In this document: positions 39,457-45,641 of the stretch, in pieces
Layout: every line of letters begins with the position of its first letter
Position numbering within the stretch: the first letter of the stretch is position 1
Origin: Fonticula alba ATCC 38817
Taxonomy: Eukaryota > Protista > Nucleariida
Assembly: GCA_000388065.2 (NCBI GenBank)
Contig: KB932203.1
DNA: 49,324 nucleotides
Reading direction: 5' to 3' (one strand)
Notes under the pieces: generated by a model
What the model was told of the DNA's origin: nothing
Databases searched by the model: none
What the model saw: the letters and a program-made list of their open reading frames with translations, nothing else
Translations under genes and position numbers: made by a program

Positions 39457-40885
39457 TGCCCTCCTCCTCGGTCATGCATTCCCGGCGAGAGGTGGCCACG
39501 ACCGCCCGAAGTCGTGCCTCCGCCAGGGCGGACGATGTGCCGGGGGGCTCATCGTCCCGCGGCTCATGCTCACATCCCACAGGGGAGACCTCCGTCTAAC
39601 CCGGGGGCAATGGTGCAGACGCATGGGAGGGGCAGAGGGGGGGGGGGGGGCCGGGCCGACTCCCGGCATGAAAATCCACATATCAGCCCATCCCCTCTCC
39701 GGCCGGCCCCCGGCCGCCGGTCGCGCTCTAGTCTCTCTTGGGCGAATCGGCGGGGGAGAAGGCGCCGCACCACGGGGCGCGCCTCAGCGGTGGCCAGCCG
39801 TGTGTCCCAAAAGAAGGCTCCCGTATATGGGCCCCTTTGTCTGAGGGCTGCCGTGTGTGTGTATGTGTGTGTGTGTGTGTTTGTCTTCCGAACGCGCAGG
39901 CTGGGCGGGCAGGCGGGCGCCCCACCGAGGCGGCAATATTGCCTTGCTTTCTGTATCTCTCTCTCTCTCTCTCTCCCTGTCCCTGGCTCCCCGCGCTTGT
40001 TTGCACCCGCTCGGTCTTTTCACGCTCACGGAGATCGGGGATCTATCGAACCTGGTGGCCAGTCCCCTGGCCATCCCCGTTGCTTGTGCCGCCAGCCGGC
40101 CGGTGCCAGTGTTGTTGCTGCCGCTACCGAAGCAGGAGGCCTTTCTCCCCCCCCCACCGTACCCTCGCCCGCCTGGGGCATCTCTCTCACACAGGTGCCC
40201 GCAGCTGGGAGCCACCTCCGCCGCTTGCTTTTGATGGCGCACCTCGTAGTTCATGGTCGATGGCGACTTGAGTCCACCTACCCTTCTCGGGACGGGCCTC
40301 GCCCCGGGAGCAGGCGCGATGATGTGGGCAATGGTGAGGAGGGTGATGATCAGCAGCCATCTTGGCGGCCTACTTGCCAGGAGTCCCCAGCGGATTTCCC
40401 CCCTCTCTCCCTCACACCTACCCCTCCCCCCTCCCCCTCCCTCCCACACCCACGCGGCCTCACATCGTCCTCTCTTTGTTGATGCCAGCTCGCCTCCTCG
40501 CTGCTCTCTGCCCTTTCCCCACCCCCTCCCTGGGCGCCTGGTACGCCATTTCCCCGCCTCGCCTCAGATCGCACTACGACCTGCCGCTCGCCTGTCCTGA
40601 TGCCTGCCTGCCTGCCCTGATGCTTGTCTATTGTGCCGCTCTTCCTCTNNNNNNNNNNNNNNNNNNNNNNNNNNNNNNNNNNNNNNNNNNNNNNNNNNNN
40701 NNNNNNNNNNNNNNNNNNNNNNNNNNNNNNNNNNNNNNNNNNNNNNNNNNNNNNNNNNNNNNNNNNNNNNNNNNNNNNNNNNNNNNNNNNNNNNNNNNNN
40801 NNNNNNNNNNNNNNNNNNCTCTCTCTCTCTCCTCCTCCCCCACCCTACATCCATCGTCCCACGGTCTCGCTGCGGGTGATCAGCG

Positions 40886-43800
40886 ATGCTCTCGATCCAC
40901 GATCTCCTCCGGCCGCCACACGATGTGTTCGAGCTTCAGACCACCCTAGGCGCAGGCACCTTCGGGAAGGTCCTCAAGGCCCAGCACCGTGACAATGGCT
41001 CCATCTCTGCCATCAAGTGCGCATACCGAATAGCTGTTGCCCCGCCCGCCCCCCTCCCCCTCCCCCTCTCTCCCTGCGTCCCCTCGCCGGGCTGGGCTCT
41101 GACCACCATCCTCCTGCTCTCCCACCGCTCGATCTCCCCTTCAGGATTGTCCCCCTGGACCATAGCGATAAGACCAGTCAGACGGAAATCCTGCGCGAGG
41201 TGGAGCTTATGCGCGGCCTGCGCTGCAACCAAATCGTCCAGCTGCTCGGGACATACCTCCTGCCGCTGCAGCTCTGGGTGCGTGTGCCCTGCCCTTTCTT
41301 CCGCCCGTGCGCCCGCTTCTTGTCAGCCTGCGCGGAGGCTCTAACCATTGTACCGCAGATCGTTCTTGAGTACTGCCCTGGCGGAAGCATCGCCGACTAT
41401 CCACGCTTCTGCAATCGCACCCTGCAGGAGCGTCAGATCGCCTCGATTTGCCGGTGCGTGTATTCGCCTCTTCTTGTCTTCCCCTGATATCCCCCCCCCC
41501 CNNNNNNNNNNNNNNNNNNNNNNCCCCCCCCCCCCCCCCGACCTCGCACACATGCAGCGATTCTCTCGCCGGCCTTGTCTACATGCATAACCAGCGCCTC
41601 ATCCACCGCGACGTGAAGGCCGGCAATATCCTCCTCGGGATGGACGCCTCGGCGAAGCTCGCGGACTTCGGTGTTGCGTCGCGCCTCAGCTCGCAGACCA
41701 TGCACCGGCGAACGCTGACCGGCACGCCGTACTGGATGGCCCCGGAGGTTGTGCAGGAGAATGACTATGACGAGCGCGTGGATGTCTGGTCGCTGGGAAT
41801 CACCTGTATCGAAATGGCCGATGGTCGACCGCCCTTCTCGGAATTTCGTCCGATGCTGGCCATGATGATGATTCCGAGCAAGCCCCCGCCGACCGTTTCG
41901 CAGCGTGCGTTTCTCCCTGTCCCCCTTTGCCCCACTCACCTGGCCCCATCTCACCCTGCCCCCGGCATTTTTCCATATGGGGACTACACCCCCGCATGGC
42001 ATGTGTTCCCCCCTCCCAGCCGAGCGCTTCTCGCCCCTCTTCCTGGACTTCATCAGCCGGTGCCTGGTTAAGGACCCGGCACACCGGCCCAGCTCCAAGG
42101 ATCTGCTCAGCCACCCGTTCCTGTCAACCGGCGTGTCCCTGGAGCCCGTCCTCACGGAGATGATTACCGCGATTGACCGGATGTCGCAGATCTCGGTGCG
42201 TGTCGAGAGCCTTCCTCCGCCCCCTCCCCGCCTGGTGGCCACCTGTTGCCTTGCTTGTTGGCCCCTTTCTCATCTGTGTCCTATCACACCTCCCCCTCCC
42301 CGCAGGATGGCATCGCCAAGGCCCATGTGGCGATGGCCGGCGGCCCAGTTGACGTGGGCGTTGGCTCGCCCATGCACCATCCGCAACAGCCGGCGCTGCC
42401 GCAGCACCCCCACCAGCAGCAGCAGCATTATCACTCGCAGCAGCCGCACCACCCTCCACCGCCGCAGCCGCAGCCGCAGCCGCAGCCGCAGCAGCAGCAG
42501 CAGCACTACATGAAGCCACATCCGACGGCTTACCTTCTGCAGCAGGGCGGCCACGCTGTCTCCCCGAATGGGAGTACCGCCAATTACCAGTCGCCGGCGG
42601 GGACCCCTCGGCCGGCAGCCGGCGGGGCCTTCCCCCCGCCACCGCCGCCAATTGCCCTGCCCTCCCCGGGGTCCGGGTCCGGCGAGCTGGGCGGCAATTC
42701 CCTGGCGCACCACCACCCCCCCCATTCGGCTGGCGGTGGCTCGGGTCAGCCCGCGTGGTGGAGCGGTCCCGGTGCTGGGCGACACCCCTCCCCTCCAAAC
42801 TCGGCCCCGACGACTGGCAGCAGCAATCCCAGCACCTACACATACAATGGCAGTGCCACCACCGGCCCGACGGCGGCCGGCACATCATGGAACCTTCCGC
42901 CTCCCAGCCCCACTGCCGGCCATGCTCCCCTTCCGTATGGCGCCACTGGCGGGCATCAGACCCCCCTGCCGCCGGCCCCCACTCGCGCGGCTCCCCTGCC
43001 GCCAGGTGCCACCTCGCCGGCGCCCCTGCCCGGACCCATTTCTCCGCCGCCCCTGCCGCCAGCCTCGGCCCCCGGGACACAGCAGCACCCCCCGCCAGCC
43101 ATTGCCCTGCCAGCGCCTGCCACCGGTTCCCGGCAGCTGGACGGCACCTCGCCCCCCTCCTCGAAGCCCGCCTCCCCCACCTTGCAGTCGGAGCTTGGCG
43201 CCCTGCAGCACCCGCCGCCGAATATCCCCCTGAAGAATGTGCGTACACACATGTCCACACAGAGGCACACACATATATGCGCCAGTCTGCCCCCCNNNNN
43301 NNNNNNNNNNNNNNNNNNNNNNNNNNNNNNNNNNNNNNNNNNNNNNNNNNNNNNNNNNNNNNNNNNNNNNNNNNNNNNNNNNNNNNNNNNNNNNNCCTGC
43401 CTCCCCTCCCAGGCGTGTCCCACATCACCTGGCGGTCTGCCCCAACTCACCAGCCTTCTCCCGCCGTAGCTTCCTTCCCCGATCATCGCCATCTTCGTCA
43501 AGTCCGGCAATTCCACCTTCGAGGCGGACCTTCGCCGCGGGCCGTTGGCCATCATGCGCACTCCTTCCTCCGACTCGCCGAGCACCCCGGTGCCAACCAA
43601 CTCCATTTGGTTCAAGTCTCGTGTGGTCTCTCGGCACCATGCCCAGATCGACTACCACAAGCCCACCGGCCAGCTGCTCCTCTACGACATGGGGTCCTCG
43701 GCGGGGACATTCGTCAATGGCAAGCGCCTTTCCGAGTTCCAGCGCCCCTCCAAGCCCTACACCCTGTCCACGAGCGACGACGTGCGCATCGGCACTAGCA

Positions 43801-43973
43801 TCGACATGAATGGCTCGGATTTGGCCGAGGGTGCCGATGAGTCGGCCTCCCCGTCGGATCGCCGCGCCCTGCGCCTTAGCGTGTTTCTCGATTATACGCA
43901 CAACCCAGCTGGCCTGTACTGCATTATTCTGAGCAACAACCCCCACAAGCATGGCATTCGCGAGCTCTGCTAA
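40886..43973 (+). CDS. STE20/GCK-II (MST1/2-Krs-like) Ser/Thr kinase with Pro/Gln-rich linker and C-terminal FHA domain
   Basis: Phase-consistent exons 40886-41016, 41145-41277, 41359-41453, 41558-41904, 42020-42195, 42306-43238, 43470-43973. Kinase motifs: LGAGTFGKV, AIK, HRDVKAGNILL, DFG, GTPYWMAPEV, DVWSLGITCIEMADGRPP, MIPSKPPPT. FHA motif: FKSRVVSRHHAQI..DMGSSAGTFVNGKRLS..L...DDVRIG. The last intron contains a 100-N gap. Confidence 0.9.
43470..43973 (+). CDS. FHA-domain exon (SLMAP/Far10/Dma1-type)
   Basis: It starts after a TAG acceptor (43467-43469), which is also an in-frame stop. The exon lacks an in-frame ATG before the FHA's first beta-strands, so it must be spliced to an upstream exon. 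Confidence 0.85.
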   Translation, partial: LPSPIIAIFVKSGNSTFEADLRRGPLAIMRTPSSDSPSTPVPTNSIWFKSRVVSRHHAQIDYHKPTGQLLLYDMGSSAGTFVNGKRLSEFQRPSKPYTLSTSDDVRIGTSIDMNGSDLAEGADESASPSDRRALRLSVFLDYTHNPAGLYCIILSNNPHKHGIRELC

Positions 43974-44433
43974 GACACGAGCAGTGCGCCCCCAGCGTGT
44001 GCCGTGCTTTTATTGAGGCGAGGAGAGCTGTGCGCAGGCGCACGAGCTAGCGACGGAGCGCGTGCACCCCCTCCGGAGAAGGCACCTCCCCCGAGCAGCA
44101 GCAGCAGCAGCAGTAGCAGCAACAACAACAGCAATAACAACGGCCTCTGCGGTGATGACGGCAGAATGTCTCCAAAAAAAAAACGAGGGCGCCCTTCACA
44201 TCTCGCTACCTTTTTATCCCCCTTTTTATATTCAGAGCAAGGGCACACCCGCGCCCGACCCTTCCCCTCCACATGAAACGCGCCAGCGCCATCTGTCTCC
44301 AGCAATGCGCAGGATGGCACCTTCCCTGCGCACAGACAAACGGAGCAGCCCAATATCCCCCCCCTCCACCCGCATTCTCACTGCAAAGAGAGGGAGAGAG
44401 AGAGATGCTCTCGTGCACGTCCCCCCTCCCTCT

Positions 44434-44747
44434 TCCCCGATATGGGCCCCGGGGAGAGGCACGGAGCACGTGCCTCCACCATCGGTCGGGTCGAGTTAAG
44501 TCTTGGCCGCTTGTGGACCCGTGTTTCCCCCCCCTCCCCCCCCCCCCACTCCCTCCCCCCTCTCTCCCCTTCCCCCTTCCCCCCCCCTTCCCACCACACC
44601 ACACAACCAACCAAAAGCAACACCACAACCAACCCCCCCACCCGCATCCCCGATATGGGCCCCGGGGAGAGGCACGGAGCACGTGCCTCCACCATCGGTC
44701 GGGTCGAGTTAAGTCTTGGCCGCTTGTGGACCCGTGTTTCCCCCCCC
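44434..44747. repeat. Direct repeat of a 101-bp element (44434-44534 and 44647-44747; period 213)
   Basis: Identical TCCCCGATATGGGCCCCGGGGAGAGGCACGG...GTGGACCCGTGTTTCCCCCCCC copies separated by an unrelated C/A-rich spacer. Confidence 0.95.
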
Positions 44748-45641
44748 CCCCCCCCCCCCCACTTCCCTTCTTTGGCTTCATACCTCCCTTTTCTGCCCTC
44801 CTGGCCGGCCACCATGCGCTGCCGGCACAGGAATACAATCCCTAGAATAGCATGATCATCACTCCCCCCCCCCCCCCCCCCGCCCCCTCTCCCTTCTCCA
44901 CACAGCCCTCCCGTCGGATCAGAACAAGGGGGAAAGCGAGATGAGCGCCCCTCGCCCCTTGGGGAGGAAAAGACATTCAATATGTGTGCCCGTTCGAGGA
45001 AAGCGTGTTTATTGTGTTCGGGCGAATGTGAGGGGGAAGGGGGAGGGGAGGGGGACGACCAGCCGGTCGGGCTCTGCGGCACTGCACAACACCACCCACC
45101 ACAAGAATGCATAGACACCCACATACACATGCACACGCGAATTTGTCCGCCTGTGTGCGTGTGCGTATGTGCAGAAGTATGAGCAGATACAAGTGGAGGG
45201 AGGGAGAGAGGGGGGGGGGGGAGGGCAAGACTCTGCACCAGACACATGTAGCCCCCCACACCGGAGGGAGAGAGGGGTTGTATATGTATAGGTGGAGAAG
45301 GCGTAGCAAGGGGCGAATGGAGGGGCGCGTGCCAGGGGAGGAAAGCAGAAGGGGGAGGAAGGCGACAAGGGAGAAGAAGCGGCAGGCAGGCAGGCAGGCA
45401 GGCAAAGTCACACTTGCGATCATCCCCTTGCGGAGAGGGGGGAGACGCAGAACGTGAGCCTGCCGGCCCTCTGCACGCCAGCCGCGGGTCCTCTCCCCAC
45501 CTGTCGACCCACCACCGATCAACCACCTCCCCTCAGTGACACACAGCCATACATACATGCATATATGCATGCATGCATGCATAGACATGGGCACGCGAGC
45601 AAGCGCAATCACACGGCAGCTACACCGTCAGCAGAAGAACC

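What the first reader, a model, noticed from the sequence alone, without database searches (positions are those of the whole stretch)
40886..43973. Hippo/MST-like kinase apparently fused to an SLMAP/Dma1-type FHA domain, with no SARAH domain
Seen: an MST1/2-like catalytic domain (activation loop TMHRRTLTGTPYW, MIPSKPPPT) and a ~310-aa Pro/Gln-rich linker. A phase-0 GT(43239)..AG(43469) splice then joins ..PLKN to LPSPIIAIFVK.. and a complete FHA (FKSRVVSRHH..SSAGTFVNGKRLS). Established: MST1/2 and Hippo end in a SARAH coiled coil, and STRIPAK switches them off when the SLMAP FHA binds their autophosphorylated linker. Related FHA domains occur in fungal Far9/Far10/Csc1 and in Dma1. Inference: this is a Rosetta-stone-type fusion in which the kinase carries its own pThr reader, allowing intramolecular autoinhibition, self-docking or phospho-primed substrate capture. 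I do not know of this architecture being described. The FHA has IMR in place of the usual (I/L)GR, but keeps the Arg and the SRxH motif.
Basis: partly seen in the sequence, partly recalled or inferred. Interest (0 to 1): 0.8.

Follow-up and report, generated by a model that had tools for sequence, protein, structure and literature searches.

The report
Hippo-type kinase with built-in FHA reader
The social amoeba Fonticula alba really does make one protein that joins a Hippo/MST-type kinase to the kind of phospho-threonine reader (SLMAP-type FHA) that switches such kinases off in animals. A few uncultured relatives share this rare, apparently undescribed design, and what it does is untested.

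Summary
Window 40886-43973 (+) holds a 7-exon, 772-aa gene. Both N gaps lie inside introns. Spliced RNA contigs from four runs remove all six introns exactly as modelled, including 43238->43470 across the 100-N gap. The product is identical to the public Fonticula alba protein XP_009494426.1, named 'STE/STE20/MST protein kinase'.

The kinase is MST1/2-class: 282 bits against MST1/2, 227 bits against MST3/4-type kinases. No SARAH domain is detectable. The C-terminal FHA is SLMAP/Far9-type (profile 68 and 46 bits, next family 32; best fold match is SLMAP FHA bound to pMST2). It is not Dma1/RNF8-type. The pThr-binding Arg, Ser and His are kept.

The same architecture occurs in two environmental ORFs and one genomic contig, probably from a Fonticula relative. 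A fourth, partial contig carries linker plus FHA. The four kinase domains form one clade (100/99). No other such protein turned up among MST-class candidates from 5.8 billion proteins.

All FHA-bearing members share a linker motif, R-[YQ]-x-D-x-T, absent from 199 other MST-class kinases. My favoured but untested mechanism is that the FHA reads this phosphorylated motif, in cis or in trans.

I rate it a new variant of a known kind. I found no paper describing it, and one paper scores Fonticula as lacking Hippo.

The parts
40886..43973 (+). Whole coding region of the MST-FHA kinase gene: 7 exons, 772 aa, identical to Fonticula alba XP_009494426.1
40931..42123 (+). Protein kinase domain (aa 16-270), spread over exons 1-5. 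It carries the GxGxxG loop 22-27, K44, HRD D138, DFG D156 and activation-loop T172 (41712-41714).
   Evidence: Pfam Pkinase 1.5e-67. PDB best match is MST1/2 at 282 bits against 227 for MST3/4/YSK1. Residues.
41454..41557 (+). Intron 3, which contains assembly gap 41502-41523
   Evidence: RNA joint 41452/3->41557/8, GT..AG, in 4/4 runs
42306..43238 (+). Exon 6: a 311-aa Pro/Gly/Ala/Gln-rich linker with no Pfam family. It contains the GCCGCA repeat 42461-42505 and a 30-nt repeat 42963-43062.
43131..43148 (+). Linker motif RQLDGT (R570-T575), the Fonticula copy of the clade-specific R-[YQ]-x-D-x-T motif and the candidate pThr ligand
   Evidence: present in all 5 FHA-bearing sequences and in 0 of 199 other MST-class kinases
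43239..43469 (+). Intron 6 (phase 0, GTGCGT..TAG), which contains the 100-N gap 43296-43395
   Evidence: RNA joint 43238->43470 in 4/4 runs, with zero depth at 43339-43458
43470..43973 (+). Exon 7: the FHA domain plus a conserved C-terminal extension (DRRALR..., aa 735-740) and the TAA stop
   Evidence: Pfam FHA 4.7e-15. AF2 model with 11 strands and pLDDT 76.5. Alignment with orthologs.
43593..43793 (+). Pfam FHA core (aa 647-713). The pThr-binding triad is R635 (43557-43559), S659 (43629-43631) and H662 (43638-43640).
   Evidence: The triad is defined for SLMAP as R32/S52/H55 in PMC5663475.
43974..44400 (+). 3' UTR, covered by the same RNA contigs that carry exon 7
   Evidence: table 8

Best explanation
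This is a real, expressed Fonticula alba gene. Its product is a catalytically intact MST1/2-class (Hippo-type) STE20 kinase with a disordered linker of about 310 aa and a C-terminal SLMAP/Far9-type FHA domain in place of the SARAH coiled coil. It belongs to a small, monophyletic MST subfamily that acquired the FHA once.

Proposed mechanism (inferred, not shown): the kinase, or a priming kinase, phosphorylates the conserved linker threonine in the R-[YQ]-x-D-x-T motif (T575 here). The protein's own FHA then binds that pThr. This could happen between molecules, giving head-to-tail self-association that promotes trans-autophosphorylation of T172, much as Chk2 uses its FHA. That would replace SARAH-mediated dimerisation. 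It could instead happen within one molecule, as a feedback latch that hides the site from other readers such as MOB1 or STRIPAK-SLMAP.
For: Shown:
- Gene structure and splicing, and identity to the public protein.
- MST1/2 class, 282 against 227 bits. Intact catalytic motifs and activation-loop Thr.
- No SARAH.
- SLMAP-type FHA by sequence: 6.3e-18 for SLMAP, 4.1e-11 for Far9/Vps64, and 1e-6 for the next family. By fold, the top hits are 6ar2/6ar0 SLMAP and then 6a8w Far9.
- The pThr triad R635/S659/H662 is invariant in the orthologs. It corresponds to SLMAP R32/S52/H55, which are needed for MST2 binding.
- The same architecture occurs as single ORFs P0156 and P0157 and in genomic contig L003, with two introns at the same codon positions.
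- In a tree built from the kinase domain alone, the four form a clade at 100/99.

Supporting the self-recognition step:
- R-[YQ]-x-D-x-T is in the linker of all five FHA-bearing sequences, is tandemly tripled in L003, and is absent from 199 other MST-class kinases.
- It shares the Asp at -2 (and Gly at -1 in two members) with the SLMAP FHA optimum E/D-G-pT-M-x-R/K.
- Animal MST2 autophosphorylates linker Thr motifs that the SLMAP FHA then binds.
Against: - There are no binding, phosphorylation or activity data.
- The motif's restriction to this clade could reflect shared ancestry alone.
- Fonticula's own copy (RQLDGT-SPP) is the most degenerate. It lacks the hydrophobic +1 and basic +2/+3 residues that STE20 kinases favour, so another kinase or another ligand may be involved.
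- The full-length AF2 model of ortholog P0156 shows a disordered linker and no confident contact between domains (pTM 0.59). AF2 cannot model phosphate, so this is weak evidence either way.
- No single RNA contig spans kinase to FHA.
Confidence: 0.45

Rival explanations
1. The FHA is a targeting module for other phosphoproteins, not for the kinase's own linker. It would dock the kinase on Thr-motif arrays phosphorylated by it or by paralogous MST kinases, giving phospho-primed, processive phosphorylation or kinase-kinase assembly. Candidate arrays are the GTM motifs in the tail of Fonticula's second MST kinase P0274, and the RFSDST and GTM arrays reported elsewhere in this genome.
For: P0274 (474 aa, the same organism) has DTM, GTM and GTM in its tail, like the MST2 TM sites bound by the SLMAP FHA. 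Unchecked scan notes report a GT[M/V]RFSDSTFVYR array in another Fonticula MST-like kinase and FHA proteins with Thr-motif arrays. The core RFSDST matches the clade motif better than P0001's own RQLDGT does.
Against: The array-bearing paralogs were not examined here, so those notes are leads only. The environmental orthologs carry good copies of the motif in their own linkers, which favours self-recognition.
Confidence: 0.3
2. The FHA acts in the STRIPAK circuit. It would be a built-in decoy that competes with the cell's SLMAP/Far adaptor for pThr sites and so shields the kinase from PP2A, or it would bind a phosphorylated STRIPAK subunit directly.
For: The FHA is of the SLMAP/Far9 subfamily. 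In animals the SLMAP FHA recruits PP2A to MST1/2. In fission yeast the Csc1 FHA alone localises the related SIP complex (title and abstract of PMC11321038).
Against: I did not check whether Fonticula has striatin, STRIP or SLMAP/Far orthologs. The protein has none of SLMAP's coiled-coil or tail-anchor parts.
Confidence: 0.12
3. It is an artefact: a chimeric gene model or scaffold misjoin at the N gap, with the FHA exon belonging to a separate gene.
For: There is a 100-N gap in the joining intron, and RNA contigs break inside exon 6 at a repeat.
Against: Spliced RNA joins 43238 to 43470 in 4/4 runs with flanks of at least 240 nt. Exon 6 is a continuous ORF. Three other organisms encode kinase and FHA collinearly, two of them as uninterrupted ORFs.
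Confidence: 0.02

Closest known systems
MST1/MST2/Hippo (STE20 family, GCK-II/'MST' subfamily)
   Same: The catalytic domain is the best match (about 48% identity, 282 bits). The activation-loop Thr is conserved, and a long disordered Thr-containing linker follows the kinase domain.
   Different: There is no SARAH coiled coil, so no SAV1/RASSF-type pairing is expected. The linker has no TM motifs. A C-terminal FHA domain takes the SARAH position. The kinases form their own clade apart from the holozoan and chytrid SARAH-bearing MSTs.
SLMAP / Far9-Far10 (Vps64) / Csc1, the FHA adaptors of STRIPAK, Far and SIP PP2A complexes
   Same: The FHA subfamily matches by sequence profile and predicted fold. 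It shares the R/S/H pThr triad and the extra C-terminal strands after the Pfam core.
   Different: In those proteins the FHA is N-terminal in a kinase-less, coiled-coil, tail-anchored adaptor. Here it is C-terminal on the kinase itself. Gly of the GR motif is Met (Cys or Thr in two orthologs, and kept as Gly in L003).
Chk2 / Rad53 / Cds1 / Dun1 / Mek1 (FHA-containing checkpoint kinases)
   Same: An FHA and a Ser/Thr kinase sit in one polypeptide. This is an established precedent for FHA-pThr-driven dimerisation and trans-autophosphorylation (established knowledge, not tested here).
   Different: Those have a CAMK-like kinase group, an FHA N-terminal to the kinase, and an unrelated FHA subfamily (Rad53 FHA1 scores 22 bits against 68 for SLMAP).
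Dma1 / CHFR / RNF8 FHA-RING ligases
   Same: They share the generic FHA fold.
   Different: RNF8 FHA scores only 24 bits and ranks 12th by fold. There is no RING. This is not the closest subfamily.

Membership tests
STE20 / MST (GCK-II, Hippo) kinases | Catalytic domain closest to MST1/2 rather than to other STE20 subfamilies | tested here: met
   PDB phmmer gives STK3/STK4 at 282 bits and STK24/25/26 at 227 bits. All named top database hits are STK3/4/Hippo.
STE20 / MST (GCK-II, Hippo) kinases | C-terminal SARAH domain (PF11629) | tested here: not met
   There is no Mst1_SARAH hit at E<=0.01 in P0001, P0156 or P0157, whereas Capsaspora MST scores 9.4e-16.
STE20 / MST (GCK-II, Hippo) kinases | Intact catalytic residues and activation-loop Thr | tested here: met
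   GAGTFG 22-27, K44, HRD 136-138, DFG 156-158 and T172 in HRRTLTGTPYW.
STE20 / MST (GCK-II, Hippo) kinases | Thr-Met autophosphorylation motifs in the linker | tested here: not met
   The P0001 linker has no TM motif. It has the clade motif RQLDGT instead. Paralog P0274 does have DTM, GTM and GTM.
FHA domain (PF00498) | Profile match above the gathering score, and an 11-strand beta sandwich | tested here: met
   52.8-56.2 bits against a cutoff of 20.7. The AF2 model has 11 strands, and its top folds are all FHA.
FHA domain (PF00498) | pThr-binding Arg (GR), Ser and His (SxxH) | tested here: met
   R635, S659 and H662 are invariant across orthologs. Gly before the Arg is replaced by Met.
FHA domain (PF00498) | Actual phosphothreonine-peptide binding | not testable with these tools
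   This needs ITC or FP with phosphopeptides.
SLMAP / Far9-Far10 / Csc1 STRIPAK adaptors | FHA of this subfamily | tested here: met
   The profile gives SLMAP 68.2 bits and Vps64/Far9 46.1 bits, with the next family at 31.8. Foldseek ranks 1-3 are SLMAP, SLMAP and Far9.
SLMAP / Far9-Far10 / Csc1 STRIPAK adaptors | N-terminal FHA followed by coiled coil and a C-terminal membrane anchor, with no kinase | tested here: not met
   The FHA is the last domain (aa 612-759 of 772) and follows a kinase. No transmembrane predictor was run. Only about 13 residues follow the fold.
Chk2/Rad53-type FHA kinases | CAMK-like checkpoint kinase domain with an N-terminal FHA | tested here: not met
   The kinase is STE20/MST class, and the FHA is C-terminal and SLMAP-type.

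The most novel reading that the evidence does not exclude
MST-FHA kinases would be a self-contained phospho-switch. In the fonticulid lineage a SLMAP-type FHA has replaced SARAH as the assembly and activation module of a Hippo-type kinase, by binding a phosphorylated R-Y-x-D-x-T linker motif head-to-tail. That would be an independent, Chk2-like solution to MST activation. It would also be a natural Rosetta-stone fusion showing that SLMAP-type FHA recognition of MST linkers predates the split of animals and fungi.
Probability: 0.3. Interest if true: 0.7.

Novelty: new variant of a known kind. Interest (0 to 1): 0.55.

Why it matters
In animals the SLMAP FHA reads autophosphorylated threonines in the MST1/2 linker and brings in PP2A to switch Hippo signalling off. 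Surveys that define Hippo as kinase plus SARAH score Fonticula, the sister lineage of fungi, as having no Hippo (PMC7035326).

This gene shows that Fonticula has MST-class kinases after all. One conserved subfamily has fused the kinase to the very class of FHA that regulates it in animals. If the FHA reads the kinase's own linker, this is a compact natural system for studying pThr-FHA control of MST kinases. It would also be a SARAH-independent route to activation and evolutionary evidence for an ancient FHA-MST link.

The protein is already in databases and the lineage is obscure, so the value is conceptual and evolutionary rather than immediately practical.

Tried and rejected
- The gap hides a stop or a separate gene. 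Rejected: spliced RNA contigs cross it in all four runs.
- The start lies further upstream. Rejected: an in-frame TGA sits at 40877-40879, just before the ATG, and the orthologs start at the same place.
- Dma1/RNF8-type FHA. Rejected on scores.
- A cryptic SARAH domain. None in P0001, P0156 or P0157, and none in paralog P0274 at E<=1.
- A degenerate FHA in the sister kinase P0164. hhalign probability was 0.1%.
- The word-index search with the FHA region was almost blank.
- The highest multi-stretch hits of the exhaustive FHA search (P0002, P0004, P0005 and others) are bacterial multi-FHA proteins with summed scores, so they are irrelevant. Only one of the 149 other top hits (P0136) has a kinase domain; its Pfam profile shows four FHA stretches, and I did not classify it further.
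- Full-length AF2 of ortholog P0156 gave no confident contact between domains, so it neither supports nor excludes cis docking.
- The FHA-only tree groups the five FHA domains, but weakly once Fonticula is included (85/31).
- The search of earlier findings by sequence was blank.
- I could not fetch the other Fonticula MST-like and FHA proteins mentioned in the scan notes.
- The source organisms of P0156, P0157 and L005 remain unknown.
Full report
**1. What is in the sequence**

Reading 40500-44600 and joining the ORF pieces at GTGCG donors and YAG acceptors gives a 7-exon model. The exons are 40886-41016, 41145-41277, 41359-41453, 41558-41904, 42020-42195, 42306-43238 and 43470-43973. The CDS is 2319 nt and encodes 772 aa. 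An in-frame TGA sits just before the ATG.

The two assembly gaps flagged by the scan's program (41502-41523 and 43296-43395) both fall inside introns, numbers 3 and 6. Piecewise Pfam scans find Pkinase in exons 1, 2, 4 and 5 and FHA (4.7e-15) in exon 7. The 311-aa Pro/Gly/Ala/Gln-rich exon 6 has no family.

**2. Test of the gap and the splice**

Four small RNA runs of the same organism hold the locus. Their contigs, laid on 40819-44400, show six joints, all GT..AG and all at the modelled exon ends. The joint 43238->43470 skips 231 letters, with 240-255 nt on the shorter side in 4/4 runs. Depth inside that intron is zero. The contigs lack every intron, so they derive from processed mRNA.

Two limits apply. 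The four runs are two samples of one study. The contigs also break at the GCA/GCCGCA repeat 42447-42515, so no single contig links kinase to FHA. Exon 6 is, however, a continuous ORF without N.

The 772-aa model is letter-for-letter the database protein P0001. That protein is Fonticula alba XP_009494426.1 / KCV71303.1 / A0A058ZBK6, 'STE/STE20/MST protein kinase'.

**3. The kinase**

Against solved structures, the domain (aa 1-300) scores 282 bits with MST2/MST1. The next subfamily (MST3, MST4, YSK1, LOK) scores 227 bits and PAKs about 215. All catalytic motifs are intact, as is the activation-loop Thr (T172, the equivalent of MST1 T183 / MST2 T180). No SARAH domain is detected, whereas the Capsaspora ortholog gives 9.4e-16.

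Fonticula also has a second MST-class kinase, P0274 (474 aa). It too lacks a Pfam-detectable SARAH, and its tail carries DTM, GTM and GTM motifs. A published survey that required kinase plus SARAH scored Fonticula as lacking Hippo (PMC7035326).

**4. The FHA**

By sequence, the best solved relatives are human SLMAP FHA (4.4e-9), yeast Vps64/Far9 (3.5e-6) and CEP170. With a three-ortholog profile the margin widens: SLMAP 68 bits, Far9 46 bits, the next family (bacterial OdhI/GarA) 32 bits, RNF8 24 bits and Rad53 22 bits.

An AlphaFold2 model of aa 600-772 (pLDDT 76.5, 11 strands) has as its best PDB folds SLMAP FHA bound to the pMST2 peptide (6ar2), apo SLMAP (6ar0) and then Far9 (6a8w).

SLMAP residues R32, S52 and H55 bind the phosphate and are required for MST2 binding (PMC5663475). 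They correspond to R635, S659 and H662, which are invariant in the orthologs. The Gly of the usual GR pair is Met here, Cys or Thr in two orthologs, and retained in a third.

The nearest named relatives in the 1.84-billion-protein search are fungal FHA proteins from basidiomycetes, Catenaria, chytrids and Olpidium. So the FHA is SLMAP-type and not Dma1-type.

**5. Is the architecture real elsewhere, and how common is it?**

Among the 150 best relatives of the FHA exon, only the query itself and one other protein (P0136) have a kinase domain. P0136 carries four FHA stretches by Pfam, and I did not classify it further.

Searching from the kinase side found two proteins with the same layout as single uninterrupted ORFs: P0156 (523 aa, a Logan contig) and P0157 (516 aa, a JGI contig). 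A profile of the three, run against 5.8 billion proteins, scores these three at 928-956 bits and everything else at 446 bits or less, which is the kinase alone. That search scores only the 8000 candidates sharing most words.

Two FHA-only hits proved to be pieces of further members.
- P0007 lies 270 nt downstream of kinase ORFs on a 40.5-kb eukaryotic contig from the thiocyanate-bioreactor metagenome PRJNA279279. A 4-exon model with GT..AG introns gives a 610-aa MST-FHA protein. Two of its introns sit at the same codon positions as Fonticula introns 1 and 2, and the donors have the same GTGCG/GTACG flavour. [quoted passage not shown]
- P0006 (contig L005) is a partial gene with linker plus FHA.

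A maximum-likelihood tree of kinase domains only (FHA excluded, PAK outgroup) places the four full-length MST-FHA kinases in one clade with support 100/99. Their sister is an FHA-less environmental kinase, P0164 (100/97). This clade is separate from the SARAH-bearing holozoan and chytrid MSTs and from Fonticula P0274. An FHA-only tree also groups the five FHA domains, but weakly once Fonticula is included. The simplest reading is one ancient fusion in the Fonticula lineage and its uncultured relatives.

**6. A clade-specific linker motif**

All five FHA-bearing sequences have R-[YQ]-x-D-x-T in the linker:
- RQLDGT in Fonticula (aa 570-575, window 43131-43148)
- RYDDDT in P0156
- RYSDST in P0157
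- three tandem RYSD[TS]T copies in L003
- RYNDGT in L005

None of the 199 other MST-class kinases I had fetched has it. The FHA-less sister P0164 instead has three D-x-D-T-V-K-[IL]-T-[RK] repeats.

The SLMAP FHA prefers E/D-G-pT-M-x-R/K, and MST2 creates its own SLMAP sites by linker autophosphorylation. The motif here shares the Asp at -2, and in two members the Gly at -1.

Non-PAK STE20 kinases favour Thr with a hydrophobic +1 and downstream basic residues (PMC6445471). P0156's DDDTVKRH fits that preference. Fonticula's DGTSPP does not, so the responsible kinase is uncertain.

**7. How it most likely works**

Shown: the architecture, the classes of both domains, the intact catalytic and pThr-binding residues, expression and splicing, and conservation in a clade.

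Inferred: the FHA reads the phosphorylated linker motif of the same protein. I favour recognition in trans. This would give head-to-tail self-association that replaces SARAH dimerisation and promotes T172 trans-autophosphorylation, by analogy with Chk2 and Rad53 (established knowledge). A cis latch is the close alternative. I put about 0.45 on self-recognition overall.

The main rival (0.3) is docking on other phospho-Thr arrays. These include the GTM motifs of P0274 and the arrays that other first-stage notes report in this genome: GT[M/V]RFSDSTFVYR in another MST-like kinase, and FHA proteins with GTM arrays. I could not check those notes. A STRIPAK-decoy role is possible (0.12). An artefact is nearly excluded (0.02).

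The full-length AF2 model of P0156 has a disordered linker (aa 299-358), a helix (360-381) just before the FHA, and no confident domain packing. That is uninformative for a phosphate-dependent contact.

**8. Novelty**

Full-text searches combining FHA, STE20/MST, Hippo, SARAH, Fonticula and kinome found no description of an MST-FHA kinase. The protein itself is public, and its FHA hit is precomputed in domain tables. The components and the FHA-MST relationship are known, but their fusion and the accompanying linker motif are not. I therefore rate it a new variant of a known kind, of moderate interest.

Noticed in passing
L003:241-2462 (contig from bioreactor metagenome SRR1955887 / PRJNA279279): This is a fourth MST-FHA gene, which a prokaryotic gene caller split into three ORFs. 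A 4-exon model gives 610 aa, with three tandem RYSD[TS]TAV units in the linker. Two introns sit at the same codon positions as in Fonticula. The contig probably comes from the 'relative of Fonticula alba' reported in that bioreactor.
   Followed up: partly
P0274 (Fonticula alba, outside the window): This is a second MST-class kinase of Fonticula (474 aa). It has no Pfam-detectable SARAH and carries DTM, GTM and GTM motifs in its tail. So Fonticula is not 'Hippo-less' at the kinase level, contrary to a SARAH-based survey (PMC7035326).
   Followed up: partly
P0164 (JGI environmental protein, 698 aa): This FHA-less sister of the MST-FHA clade carries three D-x-D-T-V-K-[IL]-T-[RK] repeats in its linker and an EEIQKE-type repeat at its C-terminus.
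   Followed up: no
window 44421-44553 and 44634-44766: A 133-nt direct repeat (96% identical, 213 nt apart) lies just downstream of the gene, flanked by long C/CT-rich tracts. RNA contigs reach at least 44400, so it lies at or just beyond the end of the 3' UTR.
   Followed up: partly
window 41720-41749: Each of the four RNA runs has a 255-nt contig that matches only about 30 nt here, the conserved GTPYWMAPE-coding stretch, and then diverges on both sides. This is presumably a paralogous STE20 kinase transcript.
   Followed up: no
window 42461-42505 and 42963-43062: Exon 6 contains coding repeats: (GCCGCA)7, which encodes a PQ/Q run and is where the RNA assemblies break, and a 30-nt unit repeated 3.4 times, which encodes PLPP-type repeats.
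   Followed up: no
window 40649-40818: A 170-N gap sits about 70 nt upstream of the start codon. RNA contigs carry about 340 further nt upstream of 40819, so the 5' UTR or promoter-proximal sequence missing from the assembly could be recovered from the transcript data.
   Followed up: no
L005:55-931 (Logan SRR10009858 contig): This partial fifth member (linker plus FHA, with two short introns) has three Thr motifs in a row: DGGTVK, RYNDGTSK and SDTMKIT.
   Followed up: partly
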